Source: Thecamonas trahens ATCC 50062 (Eukaryota; Protista; Apusomonadida). From it: 64,000 bases of DNA. The notes beneath the pieces are model-generated. The model worked only from the letters and a program-made list of their open reading frames with translations, did not search any database and was not told the origin of the DNA. Shown one piece after another: positions 34,099-47,412 of the stretch (positions are counted from its first letter, which is position 1; every line of letters begins with the position of its first letter). The DNA lies in contig NW_013657645.1 of the NCBI RefSeq assembly GCF_000142905.1, forward strand, positions 248,001 through 312,000, written 5' to 3'. Made by a program: the position numbers and the translations under genes.

Positions 34099-34860
34099 AT
34101 GAACAGGCTCCGCAAGGCTGAGAAGGCAAAGGTCGCCGAGTACCGCGACGTGGTGGGAGCAGCTGTGACGGCGCGTGATGCCATGACTGCCCTCGAGGCG
34201 CATGGATGGGATGTGCAGACTGCGGTGAATGCATTCTTTTCGGCTGGTGGTCAGGCTGGAGCTGGTGTGGCCTCGGGTGATCGGGCGGTTGTGGAAGCCC
34301 TGTTTGAGCAGTACAAGGATGATGGCTGCGACTCGATGCTCCTTGAGGGCGTCCTGGCGTGGTGCAACGACATGGAGCTCGATCCAATGAAGCGCCCGCT
34401 GCTCATTGTGTGCCACAAGCTCCAGGCTGCCGTCATGTGTGAGTTCACCCGCGAGGAGTTTATGCGCTGGGCCGAGCTCGGCGCAGACAGCATAGACGCC
34501 ATGAAGGCTGCCGTGCCCACCTTTGTGGCTCAGGTCGACTCGGACGCCACCATCTTTGCCGACTTTTACGCCTGGGTCTTCGACTTTTCCAAGGAGCCCG
34601 GCCGCCGCTCGCTCTCGGCAGAGTCGGCCCGCTTCATGTGGTCGCTGCTCCTCGCTGACAAGTTCCCCATCGTCGACCGCTGGGTCAAGTTCCTCGAGAA
34701 CCACACTCGCGACATCACCAAGGACACCTGGCTGCTCTTCCTCGACTTTGTCAACACCTACGGCACGGATGTGACCGACTACGACGACGATGGCGCCTGG
34801 CCCGTCCTCATCGACGAGTTTGTCGAGTACTGCAACGCCAACCCGGCCGCAGCCTCGTGA
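34099..34860 (+). CDS. DCN1: DCN1-like cullin neddylation E3 (UBA-like + PONY domains)
   Basis: N-terminal LEAHGWDVQTAVNAFF, MCEFTREEF, FADFYAWVFDF, ITKDTWLLFLDF, YDDDGAWPVLIDEFVEY. Confidence 0.93.
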   Translation: MNRLRKAEKAKVAEYRDVVGAAVTARDAMTALEAHGWDVQTAVNAFFSAGGQAGAGVASGDRAVVEALFEQYKDDGCDSMLLEGVLAWCNDMELDPMKRPLLIVCHKLQAAVMCEFTREEFMRWAELGADSIDAMKAAVPTFVAQVDSDATIFADFYAWVFDFSKEPGRRSLSAESARFMWSLLLADKFPIVDRWVKFLENHTRDITKDTWLLFLDFVNTYGTDVTDYDDDGAWPVLIDEFVEYCNANPAAAS

Positions 34861-35338: not shown

Positions 35339-36076
35339 ATGTCCAAGTACCGGCGGAATGCATGCCCTGTGTCGTGCGTGAAGCACCTTTTCGTGTTTAT
35401 CAACCTCATCTTCCTCATTGTGGGCTTGGCCGTCATTGGCGCCGGCGTCCACTTGTCGAAAAAGGGTTCTGCCGTACCGAAGAACCATTCTGGACCCAAT
35501 GTGTACGATTACTCCAAGCACATTGCCACAGCATTGTACATCATTGGCTCGCTCATTTCGCTCGTCTCCTTCCTTGGTTGCTGTGGTGCTTGGAAGCGGA
35601 TCAAGGCTCTGCTCTGCTGCTACTGGATGCTGGTCTTTCTTCTCATCGCCGCTCAAGTCGCCATCGGCGTCGTCGTCTATCACGCTGCAAAGGACAACAA
35701 GCTTGATGATCATCTGGCAGATTCGTGGTCTTCCTCGGACAACGCGTGGAAGAACAGCGTGCAGGAAAACTTCCACTGCTGTGGCTACAACTCGCCCACC
35801 GACGATCCCGGATCGGTCTGTCCGGGCTCCACCGCCGACGATCCCAACGCAGGATGCCGCGCTGTGCTCAAGGACGATCTTCAGAAGGCCCTGCATGTCA
35901 TCGTCATCGTGGCACTTGTCCTTGCTGCTCTGGAGCTCTTTGGCCTCCTCGCCTCCATGATCCTCATGTGCTGCCTCAACACCGAGCTGAAGGACCCGGC
36001 TGGCGTCGGCCTCCTCAACTCGCGCCAGCCGCAGCCGGCCTACCGCCCCACCTACTCGACCCGCACCTACCAGTGA
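35339..36076 (+). CDS. Tetraspanin
   Basis: Four TM helices, FLGCCGA, and a large extracellular loop with CCG (QENFHCCGY) plus two further Cys. Confidence 0.92.
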   Translation: MSKYRRNACPVSCVKHLFVFINLIFLIVGLAVIGAGVHLSKKGSAVPKNHSGPNVYDYSKHIATALYIIGSLISLVSFLGCCGAWKRIKALLCCYWMLVFLLIAAQVAIGVVVYHAAKDNKLDDHLADSWSSSDNAWKNSVQENFHCCGYNSPTDDPGSVCPGSTADDPNAGCRAVLKDDLQKALHVIVIVALVLAALELFGLLASMILMCCLNTELKDPAGVGLLNSRQPQPAYRPTYSTRTYQ

Positions 36077-36923: not shown

Positions 36924-37925
36924 CTACTTGCTCGTGGCCCACGGCAGGTTGTCGACGTCGGCGTTGCCGCCGCACAGCACGACGCCGACGCGCTCGATGC
37001 CGTGCTCTGCAGCGTAGGCGCGGAACTCGTCCGAGAGCACAACCGCGACACCGACGCCGGCCGACGGCTCGATGACGACCTTCATCCGCTCCCACACCAT
37101 CCGCATGCCGGCAATGATTGCGTCCTCCGGCACGGTGAAGATGTGGTCGACAAGGTTGGAGACAATGGCCCAGGTGTTCGGGCCCAGCGTGGTCTTGAGC
37201 CCGTCGGCAACTGTTGTCACAGGCTCGGTCTCGTGGCCGAGCCGCTCGCCTGCCACCAGCGACCGCGCCGCGTCGTCGGCGGCCGCTGGCTCGGCGCCGA
37301 GCACCTTGATGTGCGGCTGCAGGCCCTTTGCGGCAACAGAGACGCCCGAGATGAGCCCACCGCCGCCGACAGGCACCACTAGCGCATCAAGCGTCGCGCC
37401 GGCAGCCGGCATGTCGTCCAGCAGCAGCTCCAGCGCCAGGGTGCCCTGGCCGGCAATGACCGCCACATCATCCGAAGGATGGACAAACAGAGCGCTGTGC
37501 TCTTCGACAAGCGCCGCAGCCGTCGCCGCCCTCGCCGCGCCTGTCGGCTCGCACTCGACCACGTTTGCTTGGTACGTCTCCTTCACCGCCATCATCTTGA
37601 TCTTGGGCGCGGTCGAGGGCATGGCAATGTACGCCGGAATGGAGAGAGCCTGCGCAGCGGCCGCCAGCGCTTGCGCATGGTTGCCCGACGAGTGTGTGAC
37701 GACCGCAGGCGGGCGAGGATCGGCAGAGGCAAGCGCATTCGTTGCGCCGCGGATTTTAAAAGAGCCCGTCTTCTGCATGGCCTCTGTCTTGAAAAAGAGC
37801 TCTACACCAGCAGCTGCCGACAGGGCCGACGAGGTCAGGACGGGCGTGTGGTGGACGTGCGGCCGGACACGGGCGAGGGCGGCTTTGACGTCGCCCAGGT
37901 TGACGGGGAGGGCATCTGTGCTCAT
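36924..37925 (-). CDS. Serine racemase / threo-3-hydroxyaspartate ammonia-lyase (PLP fold type II)
   Basis: HTPVLTS, QKTGSFKIRGA (PLP Lys), VVTHSSGNHAQA, PVGGGGLISG, TVADGL, ERMKVVIEPSA, LCGGN. ATG at 37925. Confidence 0.9.
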   Translation of the reverse strand: MSTDALPVNLGDVKAALARVRPHVHHTPVLTSSALSAAAGVELFFKTEAMQKTGSFKIRGATNALASADPRPPAVVTHSSGNHAQALAAAAQALSIPAYIAMPSTAPKIKMMAVKETYQANVVECEPTGAARAATAAALVEEHSALFVHPSDDVAVIAGQGTLALELLLDDMPAAGATLDALVVPVGGGGLISGVSVAAKGLQPHIKVLGAEPAAADDAARSLVAGERLGHETEPVTTVADGLKTTLGPNTWAIVSNLVDHIFTVPEDAIIAGMRMVWERMKVVIEPSAGVGVAVVLSDEFRAYAAEHGIERVGVVLCGGNADVDNLPWATSK

Positions 37926-38151
37926 TGTGTGTGGGTCGGGGGGGGGGGGGGGGAGGGAGGAGAGGGTGGGGGGGGGGGAGGAGGGGGGGGGAGGAGGAGG
38001 GGAGGGAGGGGGGGCNNNNNNNNNNNNNNNNNNNNNNNNNNNNNNNNNNNNNNNNNNNNNNNNNNNNNNNNNNNNNNNNNNNNNNNNNNNNNNNNNNNNN
38101 NNNNNNNNNNNNNNNGGGAAAATGTCAAGGAGAATGCCAGGTGCATGAGGC

Positions 38152-40230
38152 TTAAGCCGTCGAGTCAGGCGCAACAAACAGCGGGTTGGACTGCTTGTTG
38201 AGCGGATCGTCGTAGAGCGGCGAGCCAGTGAGGGTCGAGTCGGCGTTGGCGTCAGCATCGAGCTTGCGCTGGAGGTAAGCCTCAGACTTCTTGACGGCAA
38301 AGACGACGCCGATGACGGCAATGATGAGGACGAGGTACCAACGGCGGCCGAGAGGCCGATGATGGTGGTCAGATCCTTGTTCTTGGCCTGCTGCGGCGGG
38401 AGGAAGTAGTAGTTGCACTCCTTCTGCACAGCCTTCTGCGTCGAAGCGTCGAGCGTCTCGTTACAGATCTTGGCGTACGTCGACGACGGCGAGAACATAA
38501 GCTCACAGTCGTTCGGCTCACGGCAGTGGACACACTCGCCATCAAGGCAGTACGCGCCATCGCACTGCTCCGGGCAGGTCTGGAGCGGCTCGGGGAGGAT
38601 GGCGTTGGGCGACGGAGCGGCGCCGAGAACAACGGCGAACTGGCAGAGGCGGAGGCCGTGGTTGGAGACGCAAGTCGGCTGGAGGAGGCCATCGACCTCA
38701 CCCACAATCGCCGCGCAATGCGAGTCGCGGATGCACTGCTGGCACGTGTTCGTGCCGAGATCGCAGTGGTACGACCGCGAGCAGTCGGCAGAGGTCTGGC
38801 ACGTGCCCGGGCCGGTCATCGTCGAGCCGAACCACGAGACAGGGTGCGAACCACCACCGTTCGTGCCACCATCGGTGGCCGAGCCAGCAGCAATGTCGTA
38901 CGTGAACTGCGGCGTCTGCACAGGCTGGAAGACACGCTTGGGGTGGACGCCGTGCTCGCGCACGTAGTCCTCGTCCGGCAGATCAAGGAGGCCCTGGTTA
39001 GAGCACGGCGGCACACCGCCAAACTCGTCAGCAACACCCTCCTTGTTGCACACGTTGATGTCACCCGACCGCTCGTAGTACGACGTCACCGTCGTGAAGC
39101 AGATGAACGTCACCTCGCGCGAAGCGTTGAGGATCCAGTCCGCCGGGTTAAAGTCGTTGACCTTGCCGTAGAAGCCGGCAAGCATGTCGACCGCAGACGC
39201 GGCGTCGATGAGCAGCGTCCGGACGTAGTCCTTGACGTTGATCGACGGAGCAAGGTTGAACTTGTCGAGCGTCCGGAGCTTGACACCGTTCTCAATGTCC
39301 CACACGATGAACTCAACATGCTGGATGTCGGCATCGTGGAAGTCAAACGGCTTGACCACAGTCGCACCGGCGTTGTTCTGATCCGGCACAGACGCCGAGA
39401 TGGTGCCCTGCTGGTTCTTGACCGCAACGCCACACGCGCAGTCCTCGGGGTTATCGATCTTGAACATCTCCATGTCGACGTAGATCGCCGCAGGGAGCTT
39501 GGCGTAGCAACCCTCCTGAACAGACGGCGTCGCCTCTGCGGCCGGCACACGGCAGAGCACAATGCCACGCGTGGTGACAAACGTCCGCGGGTCAAACAGG
39601 TCGTCGGTGTCGACCACGTTGCCGTCGAGCGGCGGAGGCGGCGACGGCGGCGGAGGCGGCGACGGCGGAGGAGGAGACGGCGGCGGAGGCGGCGGCGGCG
39701 ATGGCGGAGGCGGCGGAGGAGGAGACGGCGGAGGCGGCGACGGAGGCGGCGACGGCGGAGGAGGCGACGGCGGCGGCGACGACGGCGGCGGCGGCGACGG
39801 CGGCGGAGGCGGCGAAGGCGGAGGGGGCGGCGACGGCGGAGGCGGCGACGGCGGCGGCGACGGAGGCGGCGACGGCGGCGGAGGCGGCGACGGCGGAGGA
39901 GGCGACGGCGGCGGAGGCGGCGACGGCGGAGGAGGCGACGGCGGAGGAGGCGACGGCGGAGGCGGCGACGGCGGCGNNNNNNNNNNNNNNNNNNNNNNNN
40001 NNNNNNNNNNNNNNNNNNNNNNNNNNNNNNNNNNNNNNNNNNNNNNNNNNNNNNNNNNNNNNNNNNNNNNNNNNNNGCGACGGCGGCGGCGGAGGGGGGC
40101 TGGCAGGGCGCGGAGTCGGAGGCGGGCGACGACGGCGGCGGCGGCGACGGCGCGAGCACGCGTCGGTGGGCGTGAAAGCCAATGCGGCAATGACCACAAC
40201 TACAAGCAGAAGCTTGAGCGAGATCCGCAT
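38152..40230 (-). CDS. Type I membrane protein: signal peptide, poly-Arg, SPPP(P) repeats, Cys-rich ectodomain, TM, double NPxY-like tail (gap 39977-40076; 1-nt frameshift at ~38334)
   Basis: MRISLKLLLVVVVIAALAFTPTDA signal, (SPPP)n, CQTSADC..C..CQQCIRDSHC repeats, then IIGLSAAVG[fs]TLVLIIAVIGVVFAV-KK...SPLY..NPLF...* at 38152. Confidence 0.8.
39630..40100 (-). repeat. Coding Ser-Pro3-5 repeat tract (contains an assembly gap)
   Basis: (GGC/GGA)n-GAC units on the + strand read as CCG/CCT..TCG on the coding strand. Confidence 0.9.
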
Positions 40231-40915
40231 GATGGCTGCTCTCGTAAAGGAAGGGGGGGGGAGAAGGAAGGGAGGGAGTGAGTATGATCTCGAGAAGGGC
40301 GGCGACGGAAGATGCCCGCGGGTAGCGGCAGCCTGAAAAAAAATAAGGGTCACGCGTGACGATCGCGACCAGCCAAAAACATGCCCCACGCGGCCAACCT
40401 CATGCCCCCATGCCACAACGTGTGTCAGAGGGCCAAAGCCATTGTGCTCCAAAGATGCGGCATCTGCGTTTGTGCTACAGCATGTGCTTAAAGAAGCGCT
40501 ATGGCCGCTTGTGCATGGAAAAGCGCCACATGACTGCCCCAAGCTGCCGGCTGTACGGATGAAAACGAGCGTTGGAATTGCCTCTCGGCGGCAGCCGCCC
40601 CACCTTGCAAAGGAAGGCACAGTTGGGCAGCAAAGCACGTCCGCCCGCCCATAGAGCAAGCTATCTGCTGCCGGATGGGTTGTCGTAGGTCAGAAAGGCC
40701 TTCTCCTGTTGCTGAAGGGCACTCAGGACGCTTCGGCACTCTGGGAGCCTTGCAAGAGTACGTACCAAAAAAAGGGAGAAAAGCGAATACCCACAGTAGG
40801 GTTGTCAGAATTGGGGGGAGAAAGCGGAAGAAGAACAGAGTGCTTTCGTTTCGTCAGCCACAAAGGGGGGTGTAACAAAGTCAAGAACAGGCAGCGATGG
40901 GCAAAGCTTCCAAAG

Positions 40916-43900
40916 TTACGAGAGCAGGAAACCAGACTGGCCCTCGGTCATGGCCTGGCGGAGCTTGGCCTGCAGCACCTCGGCCGACGAGTACTCGGGG
41001 AGCTTAAGGTAGTTGAGGCACGTCATGGTCGACGGCATGTAGGCGTCGGGCTGAGCTGCCGTCTTGCGCACAATCTTAAACGGCGGGTCGAGGGCGGCCC
41101 AACCCCCGTACGGCAACCGCGGCGAGCCGGTCATGAACTTGAGGAACTGCCGTCGCTCGTTGTCGTCAAACGAGGCGAGGACGTCGAAGAGGTCGTTGAC
41201 AATCCGTGAGTGCGCCTCGTATCCGTGCTCGATTACGGTGTGCGCGGCAATGTCAGCGGCTGTCCACGGCTCGTCGGTGCCCATGAGGATGATCTCGAGC
41301 TCGCGGGCGTCAAAGCCGGCGAGAGCAGCAAGGTCAAAAACGTCGTTGACCCCGGCCAGGAACGCGTCGAGCTGCGGCCGGACGCCGCTGCCAATGGTGG
41401 CATCGACTACCGCGTCGACATACTGGCCCACGTTGGCGGTCGTCACCTCCATCTCGCACCCGCCGTCGACGAGCGCAAAGCCCGGCGCGCCAGGCAGCTC
41501 AAAGACGAGGAACAGGTCCTCAACCCGGGTGCCGTGGTCGTCGACCGTGACCTTGTCTGCCGGTGTGCCGTTGGCCACGGCTTCGGCCGCCCGCATCAGC
41601 GGCTCAAGCGACGCTGCAAAGACCGGGTCGAACAGCGCCACGTCCGCCGCCGCCAGCGGCGCGCCCAGCAGCACCTTGTACATCGCGGGTGCAAACGGCA
41701 GGTCAATCAGCCGCGAGTCCATCAGCGCCTTGCCCACCAGCCACCCCATAAACTTGAAGAGCTTGAGCAGCCGCTCGCCGGCCGCCGCCGCGGTGCTCCC
41801 CGGCCCGCTAGCCTCGGCCTTGCGCCAGTCAAACGGTTTGGCGAAGAGCCCGTGTGGCGCGACAACGTACTTGTTGTCCTTGCTCTCGCTTGTCCGCCAC
41901 ATCTCCAGGTCCGCTCGCTGGACTTCGGCACACACAAGGGTGTAAAACTCGAGCGAGGGCCCAAGTCCGGTCCCTGACTCGCCAAAGTACTCGATCTCCA
42001 GCACAGACTTGGACGCCGCATACAGCTCGAGCACCTTGAACGCCGATGACAGAATGGTCTCGCGCGAGATCCGCACCTTGGACCGCTGGATCCGCCCGAC
42101 CATGACCGAGTTGCTCCGGCCGGACGAGGCCGTCGCACCCGAGTTCTCCTGCAGCTGCAGCAGCGCGCGCGCCACGCCAAACGCAGTCGTGTGCAGAAAC
42201 TGCTTGCGCGTCGCAAACGGAAAGACAAACGGCGCGCCCGCCATGAGCTGCGTCACCCACGACGGGAACGCGCCCGAGGTCACCGTCAGCGGATCCTGCA
42301 TCTGCCGCTCGAGTTTGGCCGTCACAACCTGGTTAACAAACTCTCCGCTCGCCACGACACCACTGCCCGAGTCGAGCACCGCTGCCAGCTGGAGCTTGGC
42401 GTGAGTTAGCGCCTCGGGACTGTCGTACCCGCTTCCGTCGCGCTCGACCAGCTCGCGAATGTGAACCACCATCGTGTGGAGCAGCTTGAGCAGCGCTAGC
42501 GGCACAAACGCCGGCGAGGAGGACGAGAGCCCGCCCACAAGCTCCGCCAGAGGCGTCCCAATGTGCTCAAACGGCGAGAGCCACGTGCCGACACGACCAG
42601 CCTGCTTCTGTGTCCCGGCCGCACCCGCATACCGCGGCGTGCCGACCCGCCGCAGCACATTGGGCGTGCCGACCGACGCTGGCGCCACCTTGTCGTCTGC
42701 CGCCCGGAGCACCGCGCTCTGCTCCGCCACGTATGCCGCGTACTCGTCCCGAGTCTTGAGCCGGTACTCAAACGTGTACACCTCGTCCCACAGCGCACGG
42801 TGCATCTCGGCGGAGTCGTCATACGCATAGTTGTCCTCGCTCCCAGCCCGCTCGACCGCAAACGCCTGCACAGCTTGGAAGACCGTCGTCGACGGCGGGA
42901 GCTCCTTGCCGTTGAGCGAGAGCACAAGGACCGCGTTCTCGGCCGCATACTTTGCGCCTGGCTCCGCAGATGCAGTCGAGCCGAGTCCGCCGCCCCACTC
43001 CTCCACATTGTAGCCGGAGCTCGACTTTTTCTTGCCCTTGGTTGGCCGCGCGCGCGAACCGCCCTTGCGCCCCAAGCCTGGGCCACGCGCAAGCCGCTCG
43101 CCGCTCTCGGTCTCGTTCCGGCCCTCGCTGCCGTTCGTCGAGCTTGACGCCGCCATGGTCGATGCCGACCCCGACGCCGCCGCCGCCGTGCTCGGCGAGG
43201 TTGCCTGAGTGGCTAGCGCTGCATCCAGCAAGTCCATGACTGCCTGCGCCCCGTGCTCTCCGGCCTCATCATTGCCCCCACCGTCGCCAAAGCCGGCCAG
43301 CTCGTCGTCGTCCTCATCCTCGTCGTACTCGTAGTCGTCCGAAGCGCCCGAGGCGTCAACAACAGCGCCCGACGACGAGCCTGCCAGCGGCTCATCCTCC
43401 GAGCCGAGCATGTGCAGCTCAGCAGTGTTGGAGCTCGAGCGCGGAATGCCCGGCGCGGTGGTGCCCGGCGCCGGCGGCAGTTGCTTCGGCCCGCCCAGCG
43501 CCACGCGGGCCTTGGCCACGGCCTTGTTCGGCAGCTTGCCGATGACAAACTCCTCAATGGAGATGAGCGGTGCGAGCGGCTCGACAAGAAGCTCCGATGC
43601 CGTGTACGAGAGGCCTGCCTCGCGCGAAGACGATCCCGGGCTAACTGCCACTCGGAATGACTGCGTCAGAATCCGCAGGTCCTGGTTGCCGTCCGGGGGT
43701 GAGTGGAGCATGACTGGAAGCGTCTGGACCTTGGACAGCGCCTCCTGCACCTTGCGCACAAGCGGGACCAGCATCGGGTAGCCGTGTTGCGGTGTCGCCG
43801 GCGACGGCGCGTCGGCCGGCACCGATGCAGGCCGCGGCGCGTTGACCCACACGTGCGCAAAGACCGCAAGCCGGTCGAGCGCAATCTGCGGTGCAACCGC

Positions 43901-46618
43901 CGTGTCAGTCAAGTACTCCAGCAACTGCTCCATGACCTCGGACGAGATGATCTCAAAGGTTGTGACCATCGCAGTCCCTGTACCGTCGACGTCGACAAGC
44001 GCGTTGCGAAGTGCCACATGCGCACCCAGGTCGGCAGCGCCAACAGAGTCGCGTGGGAGCTTGTTGAGGCTCGCAGCTACCTCCCGCAGATGGCTCGTTC
44101 GCTCGTGCCCGCTGCCGGCGCCATGCAGCGTGCCAACGACGTCGAGAACGCTCGAGACGCTGGTGGCAATCCACTCGCGAAGTGTGGGAGTGTTCTCGCT
44201 CCTGCTTGTGGCCTGCTCAGTCCCACTCTTGCTGTCATTGTTCGAGCCAGACGACGAGGCCTGGCCAAATGCAGACTTGGATGTCGAGCACGTGCCCGCA
44301 GGCGTGCCGAGGCTGCCGAGGTCCGAGCTAGCGAGCCGCTTGAGCTCAAACACCACACCTTCCTGCACAAAGTACGAGCCAAAAACGTCCGGCAGCTTGG
44401 CAAGGAGCATGCAAGCCAGCGAGACGCCGACCGCCAGCGCGGTCAGGTCCCGCTCCGAGAGAAGCGCGGCCACAAACGACGAGATGGGCAAGTCTGCAAG
44501 CCGCTCGCGAAGAACATCGGCCGAGGCTAGGTGCACAAGCTTGCCCACCACACGAAATCCGCCGTTGCGGACCGACGGATTGACCGACGTCGCGCACACG
44601 CCAAGTAGCGGTGCAAGCAGCATCTCGACCATCGAGTCGAGGAGCAGCTCCGACTCGGCCAGCATCCGCAGACGCGCCGTCTCACCGGTCTCGGTGTCGA
44701 GCACCTCATTACCGGCGGACCGTGATTCGAGGCCCTTGCCGAGCACAAGCTGGTATCCGCCCGATGACCGGAGGCCGCCCGAGTACCGCGACGAGAACCG
44801 CGAGAGCGACGAGTACGACGACGACGACGACGACGACGTGTTCTTGGCTGGAAAGTCATACTCAAAGTACGGCAGCAGCTCCGAGGCCAGCGTCAGCGAC
44901 TGGAAGAGAACCGCCGCAGGCCGTCCGGCAGCGGTGCCCGACGCCGACGTAGTCGGCGCCATGGTACTAGGGGACGCAAGGGTACCGCCAGGCGTGCCGG
45001 CCGGAACCGGCGAGCCCGGTGCCGGCCCAGCTCCGGTTGCGTCGCCGGCCGCGGGCTCGGCAGCAATGAGGTGCCGCAGGACAGCGAGGACGCCAGACTG
45101 CATGAGGTTGGTGGCGAGCTGCGGCGAGGCACGCGCAAAGGTAGCCAGCGTCGACAGTACCATGACAAACGCGTTGTCCGGGAGCGAGACTGAGGCCTCG
45201 GGTCCGATGAGCATGAGCAAGTTGTTGAAGAGTCCGTAAGACGTGACCGTCGTCAGCGCCGCCTCGTCCGAGTAGAGCGACGATGCCAGGCGCGAGAAAC
45301 AGAGGATGGCCGACTCGAGGATTTTCGGGTCCGAGTAGTTGAGCAGGTTGGTCAGCGTCGGCAGCGTGTCTGACAACAGTGGCATCGTCGACGACGACAT
45401 CGACCGGCAGAGCGACGACGCGAGCTTGACAGCCACCCGCTGCGACGACATCGGCATAAAGTCCAGATGCGAGAGCACAGCCATCATGCCGCCTTCTTGG
45501 ATGATTGCCGCCGCGTGCTCGTGCGCAACCTTGTCCAGCGCCTGCATCGCCGCCTCGGCGAGATCGATGTACGCTAGATTCATCAAGTTCATAACCAGCG
45601 GCGGCACGCCGCCGTTGCCCACCACCACATTGGCAGAGTTGGGCTGGATGTCCATCATGTGTGTAAGCGACCGGATGGCAAATAGCATGATGTTCGGGTT
45701 GTGCGCCAGCGAGAGACAGTTGATCATCGGCGGCACAAACGCGTCAGGCGAGAATCCCGACATCGAATCTTCGTTCGCCATCGCCAGGTACTCGCACAGC
45801 TGCGAAAGCGCAAGCAATACGCGCGTCTCGTCATGCAGCGCAGAAATGCCCTCCAGCATCTCCGTCAAGGGTCCCGACATCGGTCGGCGTCGGTGAAGTA
45901 GACCTCCGAACGCGCGGGAAAAGAGCTGCCCGGCTCGCGGGACGCTAGATGCGGTGCTCGAGGTACTGCCGCAACTGAGCGGACTCGCGAGGTCTCGAAG
46001 CGGCTTGTGTCGCTTGAGCTCTTTGGCTTTGGATGCCTTGTTAGACGGACTGGAGCGAGAGCGCTTGCTCTTGCTCTTGCTCTTGCTTTTGCTCTTGCTC
46101 TTGCTCTTGCTCTTGCTGGCTTGCGGCGACTCGGTCGACGGCGACGCGGGGCTTGGCTTACCCTTGTCCCTGTATTTGGTCTTGTCCTTGCCCTTAGCCT
46201 TGGTCTTGCCCTTGGTCTTGGCCTTGGATTTGCGTGCTTTTGTCAAGTCTGGCGCAGGTCCGGGGTGTGACGGCTTGCTTGCAGTCAGGCCCCGTGTCCG
46301 TTTCGACGGTGGTGATGTCTCGGTAGGCGAGTGTGCTGACGATGAGTTGCGACGCTGGCGCTTCCGAGTCTTCGGTAGACACGAAGATGGAGTCGATGAG
46401 TTGGTCTTTGTTGACGATGGCGCAGTATCAGTCTTTCGCTGCTTGCGGGTCTTGCGCGGGGCGGGGAGAGAGCTGTAGACGGCGGCGAGCTCGGCTCGGT
46501 CTTGCGAGATCGAGTCTGTTTCCGCGACGAGTTTTTCTGCACAGGAGACAAGCGTCGGGACGACTACGCCATAGCAGCCAAACCAAGCCATCCCCCATTT
46601 ACAGAGCATGCCTCTCAT
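40916..46618 (-). CDS. ARM-repeat HECT E3 ubiquitin ligase, TRIP12/UPL3/Ufd4 type (start uncertain)
   Basis: YIDLAEAAMQALDKV, KLERQMQDPL, PFVFPFATR, LEIEYFGESGTGLGPSLEFY, FLKFMTGSPRLP, PSTMTCLNYLKLPEYSS (catalytic Cys), terminal GFLLS. Confidence 0.95.
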   Translation of the reverse strand: MRGMLCKWGMAWFGCYGVVVPTLVSCAEKLVAETDSISQDRAELAAVYSSLPAPRKTRKQRKTDTAPSSTKTNSSTPSSCLPKTRKRQRRNSSSAHSPTETSPPSKRTRGLTASKPSHPGPAPDLTKARKSKAKTKGKTKAKGKDKTKYRDKGKPSPASPSTESPQASKSKSKSKSKSKSKSKSKRSRSSPSNKASKAKELKRHKPLRDLASPLSCGSTSSTASSVPRAGQLFSRAFGGLLHRRRPMSGPLTEMLEGISALHDETRVLLALSQLCEYLAMANEDSMSGFSPDAFVPPMINCLSLAHNPNIMLFAIRSLTHMMDIQPNSANVVVGNGGVPPLVMNLMNLAYIDLAEAAMQALDKVAHEHAAAIIQEGGMMAVLSHLDFMPMSSQRVAVKLASSLCRSMSSSTMPLLSDTLPTLTNLLNYSDPKILESAILCFSRLASSLYSDEAALTTVTSYGLFNNLLMLIGPEASVSLPDNAFVMVLSTLATFARASPQLATNLMQSGVLAVLRHLIAAEPAAGDATGAGPAPGSPVPAGTPGGTLASPSTMAPTTSASGTAAGRPAAVLFQSLTLASELLPYFEYDFPAKNTSSSSSSSYSSLSRFSSRYSGGLRSSGGYQLVLGKGLESRSAGNEVLDTETGETARLRMLAESELLLDSMVEMLLAPLLGVCATSVNPSVRNGGFRVVGKLVHLASADVLRERLADLPISSFVAALLSERDLTALAVGVSLACMLLAKLPDVFGSYFVQEGVVFELKRLASSDLGSLGTPAGTCSTSKSAFGQASSSGSNNDSKSGTEQATSRSENTPTLREWIATSVSSVLDVVGTLHGAGSGHERTSHLREVAASLNKLPRDSVGAADLGAHVALRNALVDVDGTGTAMVTTFEIISSEVMEQLLEYLTDTAVAPQIALDRLAVFAHVWVNAPRPASVPADAPSPATPQHGYPMLVPLVRKVQEALSKVQTLPVMLHSPPDGNQDLRILTQSFRVAVSPGSSSREAGLSYTASELLVEPLAPLISIEEFVIGKLPNKAVAKARVALGGPKQLPPAPGTTAPGIPRSSSNTAELHMLGSEDEPLAGSSSGAVVDASGASDDYEYDEDEDDDELAGFGDGGGNDEAGEHGAQAVMDLLDAALATQATSPSTAAAASGSASTMAASSSTNGSEGRNETESGERLARGPGLGRKGGSRARPTKGKKKSSSGYNVEEWGGGLGSTASAEPGAKYAAENAVLVLSLNGKELPPSTTVFQAVQAFAVERAGSEDNYAYDDSAEMHRALWDEVYTFEYRLKTRDEYAAYVAEQSAVLRAADDKVAPASVGTPNVLRRVGTPRYAGAAGTQKQAGRVGTWLSPFEHIGTPLAELVGGLSSSSPAFVPLALLKLLHTMVVHIRELVERDGSGYDSPEALTHAKLQLAAVLDSGSGVVASGEFVNQVVTAKLERQMQDPLTVTSGAFPSWVTQLMAGAPFVFPFATRKQFLHTTAFGVARALLQLQENSGATASSGRSNSVMVGRIQRSKVRISRETILSSAFKVLELYAASKSVLEIEYFGESGTGLGPSLEFYTLVCAEVQRADLEMWRTSESKDNKYVVAPHGLFAKPFDWRKAEASGPGSTAAAAGERLLKLFKFMGWLVGKALMDSRLIDLPFAPAMYKVLLGAPLAAADVALFDPVFAASLEPLMRAAEAVANGTPADKVTVDDHGTRVEDLFLVFELPGAPGFALVDGGCEMEVTTANVGQYVDAVVDATIGSGVRPQLDAFLAGVNDVFDLAALAGFDARELEIILMGTDEPWTAADIAAHTVIEHGYEAHSRIVNDLFDVLASFDDNERRQFLKFMTGSPRLPYGGWAALDPPFKIVRKTAAQPDAYMPSTMTCLNYLKLPEYSSAEVLQAKLRQAMTEGQSGFLLS

Positions 46619-47412
46619 TGTGTGAGTTGCCTGTCTCACCCGGCACACTGCAGCTACTGCGACCCACCGTGCCTGTCTGGCCTGGCCGGCCTGGCCTTGG
46701 CGCTTGACCACCACCACCACCAGAAGCCGCCTCAAGCTGGACGACAAGATGAAGATACAAATAGGGACTACATGCGGGAGTGTGGAAGAAGGAGGAGGGG
46801 TCGGGGAGGGGAGGTGTGGGGTGCGCGGTTGCGGCGAGACCAAAGGTCACGAATGATGCCATAGACAGCCAAGGGTGTCCCCTCTCCGGGGAGACCTACT
46901 GGGTCATGGAAGAAGATATGGAGAATGTCAACTGCAGCATACCATGCAGTGTCCATGGGTGGTGCTAGATGGCTGGGAGGAAGGCGGTACTGGGTGGTGG
47001 TAGCAGTGGCGGTGGGGCAGAGGGACTTTCGCGACATGGCTTTCCCTCGCGACCGTGTCACCCTCTCCTTCCGCCCCCCCCTCCTTCCAAGGATACGGAC
47101 ACGTCCTGCTGCCTAGCCACCCCCCTTCCCCCCTTGCCTTACTTCCCCCTCCCTCTCCCTCCTTTTCCTCACCCCCCCCCCCCCCACCACACACACACAC
47201 TTCCCCCTCTCCCTCGTCAAAGGCACTTGAATACGTACGCGGCGGACAATGGAAGCTTGAGGACGCTTGTCCATCGACGACGAATGTGGCTCTGTAAGCG
47301 CGTGTCACGTTCACGCCTCTGTTCATGATCAGTTTCCATGGTTTTGACTGCCTGAATTCCGACACGGGCGCGATCGGCACAAAGGCGGACTTGCGGCTTG
47401 CGACTTGCTGCA

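What the first reader, a model, noticed from the sequence alone, without database searches (positions are those of the whole stretch)
38152..40230. Hidden integrin-beta/Sib-like tail on an extensin-like (SPPP) Cys-rich receptor
Seen: the ORF track fuses this gene to serine racemase, but adding one C at ~38334 (GGT ACC [C]TC GTC) yields a full TM helix and the tail KKSEAYLQRKLDADANADSTLTG-SPLY-DDPLNKQS-NPLF-VAPDSTA*. Established: integrin beta tails carry two NPxY/F motifs separated by about 8 residues (talin and kindlin sites), and Dictyostelium Sib adhesion proteins have a similar tail on a non-integrin ectodomain. The spacer here is exactly 8 aa. The ectodomain has no recognisable vWA/I-like domain; it has poly-Arg, Ser-Pro3-5 repeats (typical of plant and algal hydroxyproline-rich glycoproteins) and Cys-rich repeats. 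Inference: a non-integrin adhesion or phagocytosis receptor that plugs into the talin/PTB machinery and is probably mis-annotated.
Basis: partly seen in the sequence, partly recalled or inferred. Interest (0 to 1): 0.8.

Follow-up and report, generated by a model that had tools for sequence, protein, structure and literature searches.

The report
Hidden integrin-like tail on apusomonad receptor
A surface-receptor gene of the protist Thecamonas trahens is wrongly fused to a neighbouring enzyme gene in the public annotation; read correctly, it ends in a membrane anchor and a short conserved tail that resembles the talin-docking tail of integrins, although binding to talin has not been tested.

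Summary
The window is Thecamonas trahens ATCC 50062. The minus-strand gene 40230-38152 encodes a signal peptide, a run of 9 Arg, an SPPPP-type stalk, a 433-aa ectodomain with no Pfam match, and then a one-base frame break near 38334. Both paralogues (contigs C4 and C11) have one more base at that spot and read straight into a TM helix and tail. The tail frame has GC3 0.80 and pN/pS 0.27 against C4. The reference C4 copy has four 1-nt insertions that three independent assemblies lack. The break is therefore probably an assembly error. The public model AMSG_12086 splices the ectodomain directly onto the serine racemase, so it is a chimera.

The family is tiny: 18 hits among 1.84 billion representative proteins. 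Seven members carry S[PS]LY-x8/9-NP[LM][YFA], and this is their best-conserved stretch. In this genome, xPxY-x8-NPx[YF] in a real tail occurs only here, in C4 and in the single integrin beta.

Limits on the interpretation:
- The first motif is always Ser, never Asn. This matches the talin-binding SPLH site of PIPKIgamma.
- The upstream Trp is missing.
- One subfamily has NPLA.
- No kindlin was detected.
- The complex predictor was unavailable.

Docking of a FERM-F3 adaptor, with talin first among the candidates, is a plausible but untested hypothesis. First-stage readers of this scan noted similar double-NPxY tails on other pieces of this genome.

The parts
40159..40230 (-). Start codon (40228-40230) and 24-aa signal peptide
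   Evidence: ORF 39592..40659 (-). The same N-terminus heads the intact 614-aa ORF in L017 and the annotated AMSG_12086.
40126..40152 (-). Run of nine Arg directly after Cys-Ser at the predicted mature N-terminus
   Evidence: Conserved in the C4 paralogue (R8) and in L017 (R9).
39633..40125 (-). Pro-rich (SPPPP/SPPPPP) stalk, interrupted by the assembly gap 39977-40076. Its true length and the frame across the gap are unknown.
   Evidence: It is in frame with the signal peptide and ectodomain in L017 and in C4. The nominal 100-N gap puts the two sides out of frame.
38793..39590 (-). N-terminal beta-sandwich domain (residues about 15-280 of the 433-aa ectodomain); no known family
   Evidence: AF2 model built on 17 sequences, with block pLDDT mostly 66-88 in the core and low-confidence loops at residues 197-205 and 218-233. 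No Pfam match. Foldseek found nothing at E<=1e-3. VIA-wide best Z 6.0, to Als, pilin and MSCRAMM Ig-like adhesin domains.
38403..38792 (-). Cys-rich module with two C-x2-C-x5-[DH]C type units
   Evidence: conserved Cys columns. Model confidence is mixed here: block pLDDT 34-79.
38333..38336 (-). One-base frame break: the window lacks one base relative to all paralogues and related contigs
   Evidence: Alignments: GGTA-CCTCGTC against GGCGTCCTTGTC (C4, L017, L026, L027) and GGCTTCCTCGCC (C11).
38293..38372 (-). Transmembrane helix, split by the frame break. The first half is in the ectodomain frame and the second half in the tail frame. It contains a small-xxx-small motif (SAAVG).
   Evidence: It is continuous in C4, C11 and P0002 and 85% identical to P0002.
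38155..38292 (-). 46-aa cytoplasmic tail
   Evidence: GC3 is 0.80 in this frame against 0.63 and 0.39 in the others. pN/pS against C4 is 0.27, with 13 of 21 differences at third codon positions.
38212..38223 (-). Membrane-proximal motif S-P-L-Y, with Leu at -3
   Evidence: S[PS]LY is invariant in the 7 class-A members. Precedent: the talin-F3 ligand WVYSPLH of PIPKIgamma, where Ser replaces the Asn of NPXY (PMC2171813).
38176..38187 (-). Membrane-distal motif N-P-L-F, 8 residues after the Tyr
   Evidence: NP[LM] is invariant. The last residue is Y, F or A depending on the subfamily.
38152..38154 (-). Stop codon TAA of the receptor gene
36924..37925 (-). Separate downstream gene for a PALP (serine racemase-type) enzyme, wrongly fused to the receptor in AMSG_12086
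   Evidence: PF00291 at E 6.6e-68. P0024 joins ...GLSAAV directly to DALPVNLGD....

Best explanation
The locus encodes one of three close paralogues in Thecamonas trahens of a small type I membrane glycoprotein family that seems restricted to apusomonad-like protists.

Domain order: signal peptide, a cationic Arg9 tip, a long polyproline (SPPPP) rod, an Ig-like beta-sandwich, a Cys-rich module, a TM helix and a 46-aa tail.

Shown:
- The gene ends at TAA 38152 and is not joined to the serine racemase.
- The TM helix and tail are hidden by a single missing base near 38334. This is most likely an assembly error rather than a true mutation.
- The tail carries S-P-L-Y, 8 residues, then N-P-L-F. This is the most conserved part of the protein. 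It copies the spacing of the organism's own integrin beta tail (NPLY-x8-NPIY).

Inferred:
- The tail is a docking site for a FERM-F3 (IRS-type PTB) adaptor. Talin is the prime candidate. It would couple a surface adhesion or prey-capture receptor to actin, as SibA does in Dictyostelium.
- The invariant Ser in place of Asn puts the site in the PIPKIgamma class (WVYSPLH), where phosphorylation of the Ser by a proline-directed kinase switches talin binding off. The coupling would then be regulated.
- The distal NP[LM]x motif has an unknown reader, because kindlin was not detected.
For: Gene model:
- There is a one-base gap against both paralogues and three related contigs.
- Intact TM and tail are present in C4, C11, P0002, P0004, P0005 and P0011.
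- Tail-frame GC3 is 0.80 and pN/pS is 0.27.
- The reference C4 copy has four 1-nt insertions, three of them in A runs, that C35 and three independent assemblies lack. The reference is therefore prone to indel errors in this family.
- The annotated AMSG_12086 is a chimera.

Tail function:
- The motif region is 82-86% identical between orthologues, against 59-75% for the ectodomain.
- A genome-wide scan puts the xPxY-x8-NPx[YF] pair in true tails only in the integrin beta and these paralogues.
- The organism's own integrin tail is NPLY-x8-NPIY, with Leu at -3 as here.
- There is one talin, whose F2F3 matches human talin-1 at E 1e-67 with KRWAAS and YYSVQT conserved.
- PID, tensin-type PTB and SNX17 FERM_C were not detected, whereas 11 IRS/F3 loci were.

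Literature:
- SibA's proximal NPXY binds talin A and transmits force (PMC12686525, PMC9197732).
- In PIPKIgamma, Ser650 of WVYSPL replaces the Asn of NPXY. S650N still binds talin, and pS650 or S650D blocks binding (PMC2171813).
- A beta3-SPLH chimera binds talin (PMC4003243).

Ectodomain: the beta-sandwich's best matches, though weak, are microbial and fungal Ig-like adhesin domains.
Against:
- No member has a canonical proximal NPxY.
- The Trp that is critical in beta3 (W739) and in PIPKIgamma (W647) is replaced by Leu or Val at -3.
- The C11 subfamily has NPLA, P0011 has SSLY and a spacer of 9, so the 'exactly 8' and 'Y/F' features are not family-wide.
- Pfam Integrin_b_cyt gives no hit on these tails at E<=10.
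- Distant paralogues with the same ectodomain use a different tail.
- The ectodomain fold matches are below the level that separates kinship from a common arrangement (Z<8). The first AF2 model was poor and the second only moderate (pLDDT 46 and 66).
- No read or transcript covering 38334 of this copy was found. The related contigs that cover the gene carry the C4-type 3' end.
Confidence: 0.45

Rival explanations
1. The two motifs are trafficking signals of the tyrosine or NPxY type, used for endocytosis or recycling. They would be read by a sorting adaptor, and the receptor would be a cargo or nutrient-uptake receptor with no link to talin or actin.
For: NPxY was first defined as an internalisation signal, and distal NxxY motifs of integrins are read by sorting nexins (established knowledge). 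The proximal motif lacks both Asn and the upstream Trp, and the distal motif tolerates Ala. Both facts fit a looser turn-type signal.
Against: No PID, tensin-type PTB or SNX17-type FERM_C domain was detected in the genome, although absence in a six-frame scan is not proof. The residues conserved lie upstream of the Tyr, which is the F3/PTB recognition mode. Residues Y+1 to Y+3 vary, so YxxPhi does not fit. The spacing copies the organism's own integrin tail.
Confidence: 0.22
2. The window's copy (C35) is a true pseudogene. The frameshift would be real, the TM helix and tail would not be made from this locus, and only the C4 and C11 copies would function.
For: No independent sequence confirms an intact C35-type 3' end. 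All three related contigs (L017, L026, L027) that carry a C35-like 5' half have the C4-type 3' half and flank. No protein with the C35-type tail is in the 90% cluster.
Against: The tail frame is open to a stop at the homologous place, with GC3 0.80 and pN/pS 0.27. There is only one frame-breaking indel. It lies in a stretch bounded by two assembly gaps, in an assembly that has four demonstrable 1-nt errors in the sister copy.
Confidence: 0.15
3. The likeness to integrin tails is a coincidence of short motifs. The tail would act through something else, for example phosphotyrosine/SH2 signalling or an unknown lineage-specific partner.
For: Pfam Integrin_b_cyt does not match. With variable spacing, the motif pair is not enriched genome-wide: 30 hits against 66 in the control. 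The motifs deviate from the canon.
Against: With the 8-residue spacing, the only hits in true tails are the integrin and this family. The motif block is the most conserved part of the protein. SH2 recognition needs conserved Y+1 to Y+3, and these vary (DDP, EGQ, AGG).
Confidence: 0.18

Closest known systems
Dictyostelium SibA-E (similar to integrin beta)
   Same: A type I membrane protein with a non-integrin overall architecture. It has a TM helix with small-residue motifs and a short tail with two turn motifs. In Sib the proximal motif binds talin A and carries force (PMC12686525, PMC9197732). Both occur in free-living phagotrophic protists.
   Different: Sib has an extracellular VWA domain and bacterial-like repeats, which are absent here. 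Sib has two true NPXY motifs, whereas here the proximal motif is SPLY. Sib was reported only in dictyostelids (bioRxiv 10.1101/2020.04.29.069435). T. trahens also keeps a canonical integrin, while Dictyostelium has none. There is no sequence homology.
Integrin beta cytoplasmic tail (the organism's own: contig C30, L009)
   Same: Tail length of about 46-50 aa. A [NS]PLY motif with Leu at -3 and Asp at -6, an 8-residue spacer, then NP[IL][YF].
   Different: No betaI/VWA, PSI or I-EGF domains. No Pfam Integrin_b_cyt match. Ser in place of Asn. No Trp at -5. No membrane-proximal HDR(R/K)E-like helix motif.
Talin-binding site of PIPKIgamma90 (WVYSPLH) and layilin
   Same: Ser-Pro-Leu followed by an aromatic or His residue, with a hydrophobic residue three positions before the Ser. 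The Ser functionally replaces the Asn of NPXY and is a proline-directed kinase site that switches binding off (PMC2171813, PMC4003243).
   Different: In the known ligands the hydrophobic residue is Trp, and it is critical; here it is Leu or Val. PIPKIgamma is a cytosolic enzyme, not a receptor. No binding data exist for this tail.
Extensin-type hydroxyproline-rich glycoproteins of plants and algae
   Same: Long arrays of Ser-Pro3-5 behind a signal peptide.
   Different: No Tyr cross-linking motifs. The array is the N-terminal part of a membrane receptor, not a wall protein. Hydroxylation and arabinosylation are unknown in this organism.

Membership tests
Integrin beta | betaI (VWA-like) head domain with MIDAS, Pfam PF00362 | tested here: not met
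   No Pfam family in the ectodomain or in any of 17 family members. The same model finds the organism's true integrin at E 8.5e-41.
Integrin beta | Cytoplasmic tail matching Pfam Integrin_b_cyt (PF08725) | tested here: not met
   No hit at E<=10 for the C35, C4 or C11 tails. The organism's own integrin scores 29.4 bits.
Integrin beta | Proximal NPxY and distal NxxY/F about 8 residues apart | tested here: inconclusive
   The 8-residue spacing and the distal NPLF are met in this copy. The proximal motif is SPLY in all 7 members. The distal aromatic is Ala in one subfamily, and one member has a spacer of 9.
Sib (Dictyostelium) | Extracellular VWA domain | tested here: not met
   No VWA-type hit ranks near the top of the fold searches; the only VWA-annotated entry (4fx5, Z 5.0, rank 36) is tied with generic beta-sandwich matches.
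Sib (Dictyostelium) | Tail binds talin through the proximal motif | not testable with these tools
Both talin F2F3 and the tail are defined and ready for the test (L019:4815-5429:+ and window:38155-38292:-).
PIPKIgamma-type talin F3 ligand | S-P-L-[H/Y] core with the Ser in the Asn position | tested here: met
   SPLY at 38212-38223. The Ser is invariant in the family. Definition taken from PMC2171813.
PIPKIgamma-type talin F3 ligand | Trp three residues before the Ser (WVYSPL minimal motif) | tested here: not met
   Leu or Val occupies that position in all members.
Extensin/HRGP | Ser-Pro3-5 repeat arrays in a secreted protein | tested here: met
Extensin/HRGP | Tyr-containing cross-link motifs; Pro hydroxylation and arabinosylation | tested here: not met
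   No Tyr in the repeat region. The modifications cannot be tested with these tools.

The most novel reading that the evidence does not exclude
Apusomonads, which already have a canonical integrin, may also have evolved a lineage-specific, non-integrin receptor family. It would consist of an Arg-tipped polyproline rod, an Ig-like domain and a Cys-rich module. Its tail would be a Ser-gated (PIPKIgamma-like) talin/F3 docking site built on the same spacing as the integrin tail. If so, talin-coupled surface receptors diversified, by convergence or by tail shuffling, well before animals, and phospho-switchable talin coupling is ancient.
Probability: 0.3. Interest if true: 0.75.

Novelty: new variant of a known kind. 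Interest (0 to 1): 0.55.

Why it matters
Recent work argues that force coupling through talin predates integrins and can use alternative receptors, but SibA of dictyostelids is the only such receptor known (PMC12686525). A second, unrelated receptor family with an integrin-like tail would make that idea testable outside Amoebozoa, because this organism sits next to animals and fungi and also has a true integrin. It would also show whether the double-motif tail is a portable module.

On the practical side, all three annotated models of this family in the reference genome are defective. AMSG_12086 is fused to serine racemase. AMSG_01081 and AMSG_03136 are truncated at the N-terminus. Proteome-based surveys of adhesion machinery will therefore have missed or misread them.

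Tried and rejected
- Pfam gave nothing for the ectodomain or for any of 17 relatives. Pfam on the tails gave only TM-type noise.
- A profile search against PDB sequences gave only TM noise.
- The ESM Atlas could not take the window protein. For P0003 it gave ADAM/reprolysin clusters at 0.75-0.79, which is chance level. There is no HExxH motif, so this lead was rejected.
- The first AF2 model, built on 8 sequences, was too poor to use (pLDDT 46).
- Foldseek on the second model gave no hit at E<=1e-3. The Eph-LBD and CBM rows had TM scores of 0.1-0.3 and were not used.
- An exact-pattern scan of JGI metagenome contigs for the C35-specific sequence around the frame break found nothing.
- I had hoped that L017 and P0001 would give independent evidence for the C35 tail. 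They do not, because their 3' half is C4-type.
- The motif scan with variable spacing showed no enrichment.
- The Sib primary paper (PMC1479592) is not held.
- In one script the two reading frames were placed side by side with an X at the break, for column bookkeeping only.
Full report
**Identity of the DNA.**
The window is contig C35:248001-312000 of a 28.7-Mb, 131-contig genome of about 63% GC with long intron-poor ORFs. A protein search returned the paralogue AMSG_03136 of Thecamonas trahens ATCC 50062. A cluster look-up returned AMSG_12086 and AMSG_01081 from the same strain. The organism is therefore the apusomonad T. trahens, a gliding bacterivorous flagellate known to have one integrin beta and a talin (PMC4325847; bioRxiv 10.1101/2020.04.29.069435).

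**Checking the observation.**
On the minus strand, an ATG at 40230 opens a 24-aa signal peptide. Cys-Ser, nine Arg and Pro-rich sequence follow.
- After the assembly gap 39977-40076, SPPPP/SPPPPP repeats continue to about 39633. A 433-aa ectodomain follows (window:38334-39632:-).
- That frame then runs on without a stop, through a second 100-N gap (38017-38116), into a PALP enzyme ORF.
- In another frame, 38152..38418 (-) encodes a hydrophobic stretch and then the quoted 46-aa tail, ending at TAA 38152-38154.

With the nominal 100 N, the signal-peptide frame and the ectodomain frame differ, but the length is a placeholder. An independent metagenome contig, L017, is 98.8% identical to the window upstream of the gap and 58-60 of 60 identical per block just downstream. 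It reads from the same signal peptide through a Pro-rich stretch into the same ectodomain as one 614-aa ORF. The C4 paralogue does likewise. Continuity is therefore supported. The real stalk length is unknown, and the window holds more repeats than L017.

**The frame break.**
The genome has four further copies of the ectodomain: C4 (94% identical), C11 (55%), C3 (31%) and C18 (26%).
- C4 and C11 read from the ectodomain straight into a TM helix and a tail in one frame.
- Aligned as DNA, the window lacks exactly one base at GGTA-CCTCGTC compared with both paralogues and with three related contigs.
- Downstream of the break, the tail frame has GC3 0.80, against 0.63 and 0.39 in the other frames.
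- Differences from C4 fall 13 of 21 at third codon positions, and pN/pS is 0.27. The frame has therefore been under purifying selection since the duplication.
- The reference C4 copy carries four single-base insertions, three of them in A runs. C35 and three independent assemblies (L017, L026, L027) all lack them. The reference is thus demonstrably prone to 1-nt errors in this gene family. The window's break also lies between two assembly gaps.

I judge it about 85% likely to be an assembly error. No read or transcript over this exact copy could be found.

**Annotation.**
AMSG_12086 (P0024, 756 aa) takes the signal peptide and skips the stalk and the gap as an 'intron'. It keeps the ectodomain up to ...GLSAAV and then splices directly to DALPVNLGD... 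of the PALP enzyme. It is a chimera of two genes and lacks half the TM helix and the whole tail. AMSG_01081 (C4) starts at an internal Met and contains a frameshifted stretch. AMSG_03136 (C11) lacks the N-terminus because of a large gap.

**The family.**
The word-based search gave 6 relatives. A full HMM profile search of 1.84 billion representatives gave only 18, several of them fragments. Sources are T. trahens, marine protein catalogues and metagenomes. To my knowledge the 'merc' catalogue is assembled from Tara Oceans metatranscriptomes, so those relatives would be transcripts.

No member matches any Pfam family or any PDB sequence. An AF2 model built on 17 sequences reached pLDDT 66 and pTM 0.67.
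- Residues about 15-280 form a beta-sandwich, with block pLDDT mostly 66-88 in the core and low-confidence loops.
- The Cys-rich part is less certain (block pLDDT 34-79).
- Foldseek found nothing at E<=1e-3.
- The exhaustive aligner gave a best Z of 6.0 (rmsd 4.1 Å over 126 residues). The top rows were Candida Als, Gram-positive pilins and MSCRAMM adhesins.

This fits an Ig-like surface-adhesin domain, but it is below the level that separates kinship from a common arrangement.

**The tails.**
Seven members (C35, C4, P0002, C11, P0004, P0005, P0011) share ...S-x-L-x-x-S-[PS]-L-Y, then 8 or 9 residues, then N-P-[LM]-[YFA].
- The Ser before Pro is invariant and is never Asn.
- A hydrophobic residue (Leu or Val) sits three positions before it.
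- The C11 subfamily has NPLA in three species.
- P0011 has SSLY and a 9-residue spacer.
- Between orthologues the motif block is 82-86% identical, against 59-75% for the ectodomain.
- The more distant paralogues (C3, C18, P0012, P0015) end instead in ...RFTF[ST][DE], and P0013 ends in ...HDPFAD. The tail is therefore a swappable module.

**Is the likeness to integrin more than chance?**
- The organism's single integrin beta (C30) ends ...DWGLDA-NPLY-KDAFDQHE-NPIY..., with an 8-residue spacer, Leu at -3 and Asp at -6, as in this tail.
- A genome-wide DNA scan for xPxY-x8-NPx[YF] gave 7 hits against 3 in the control. Four were repeats, stop-containing or non-tail sequence. The remaining three were the integrin beta, C4 and this gene.
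- With spacing left free (6-11 residues) there is no enrichment: 30 hits against 66. The in-frame hits include calreticulin-like repeats.
- Pfam's integrin tail model does not match these tails.

The resemblance is a specific motif architecture and not demonstrable homology.

**Who could read the motifs?**
- The genome has one talin (Talin_middle E 1.2e-16 in a 3197-aa frame). Its F2F3 matches human talin-1 at E 1e-67, with the ligand-groove strand KRWAAS and YYSVQT conserved.
- IRS-type F3 domains occur at 11 loci. At least three of these are additional talin-head-like proteins (FERM_f0, FERM_M, F3), and one protein showed only an F3 domain in the stretch scanned.
- PID, tensin-type PTB, SNX17 FERM_C and Kindlin_2_N were not detected. 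Such negatives from a six-frame scan are weak. The lack of kindlin agrees with PMC4325847.

The readers visible in this genome are therefore FERM-F3 domains.

**Literature that sharpens the hypothesis.**
- The minimal talin-F3 ligand of PIPKIgamma is WVYSPL.
- Its Ser650 'functionally replaces the asparagine of NPXY'. S650N still binds.
- S650D, or phosphorylation by Cdk5, MAPK or Cdk1, blocks binding (PMC2171813).
- A beta3 integrin carrying SPLH binds talin (PMC4003243).

The family's invariant S-P-L-Y with a hydrophobic residue at -3 is in the same register. The critical Trp, however, is Leu or Val here, which should weaken binding.

**Best reading.**
The gene model is shown with high confidence. 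Function is inferred. The protein would be a surface receptor that presents, at the end of a stiff polyproline rod, a highly cationic Arg9 tip and an Ig-like domain. The Arg9 tip could also be a kexin-type processing site. The tail would dock an F3 adaptor, with talin the first candidate, and the Ser-Pro would make the link switchable by proline-directed kinases. I put about 0.45 on F3 docking in general and about 0.3 on talin specifically.

**Rivals.**
- A trafficking signal (0.22).
- A true pseudogene at this locus (0.15; this is a separate question from the function of the family).
- A coincidental motif with another function (0.18).

**Unresolved.**
L017, L026 and L027 come from three different samples and differ from each other by 1-4%. 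All combine a C35-like 5' half with a C4-type 3' half and downstream flank. L017 also has the C35-type upstream flank. C35 and C4 share a stretch of about 400 bases that is 100% identical, inside about 700 bases of near-identity. This could reflect chimeric short-read assembly across that tract, gene conversion, or a misjoin in the reference. Long reads would decide.

**Novelty.**
The protein family is undescribed and lineage-restricted. The principle, a non-integrin receptor with an integrin-like tail, is known from Sib. I class it as a new variant of a known kind. First-stage readers of this scan flagged other 'double NPxY tail' receptors on other pieces of this genome. These are unchecked and are probably in part the paralogues described here.

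Noticed in passing
L002 (G000:C4:484704-488885), coding region aligned to window 39333-39506: The reference C4 paralogue (AMSG_01081) has four single-base insertions, three of them in A runs. C35 and three independent assemblies all lack them. They create a frameshifted stretch in the annotated protein and look like assembly errors.
   Followed up: yes
L017, L026, L027 compared with window 38150-41270 and L002: Three contigs from different samples combine a C35-like 5' half with a C4-type 3' half and downstream MOSC-gene flank. L017 also has the C35 upstream flank. C35 and C4 share a stretch of about 400 bases that is 100% identical, within about 700 bases of near-identity. The cause may be gene conversion, chimeric assembly or a reference misjoin; it was not resolved.
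   Followed up: partly
L005:1216-2502:- and L006:1477-2856:+ (contigs C3 and C18); P0012, P0013, P0015: Distant paralogues with the same ectodomain have a different tail: ...EADN...-K-x-RFTF[ST][DE] at the very C-terminus. This is conserved across species, and its function is unknown.
   Followed up: partly
L022 (C7), L023 (C11), L024 (C50), L025 (C15), L021 (C78): Besides talin, the genome encodes several large proteins with a talin-head-like FERM (FERM_f0, FERM_M and IRS-type F3; some with RA-like domains). It also encodes a protein in which only an F3 domain was found in the stretch scanned. There are 11 IRS/F3 loci in all. No PID, tensin-type PTB, SNX17 FERM_C or kindlin N-domain was detected.
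   Followed up: partly
window 35339-36073 (+), 34099-34857 (+), 40916-46843 (-): The neighbouring genes are a tetraspanin (PF00335, E 1.9e-38), a DCN1-like cullin-binding protein with UBA, and a 1975-aa HECT ligase. No functional link to the receptor is implied.
   Followed up: partly
window 37935-38016 (+): A long G/A-only tract (C/T on the gene strand) lies between the receptor's stop codon and the serine racemase start. It abuts the 100-N gap and probably caused the assembly break.
   Followed up: no
window 40126-40152 (-); L002; L017:1044-1150: A run of 8-9 Arg lies immediately after the predicted signal-peptide cleavage site (Cys-Ser-Arg9) and is conserved in C4 and L017. P0018, from another species, has Cys-Gly-Arg-Pro... 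at the same place. It may be a cationic tip or a kexin-type processing site.
   Followed up: no
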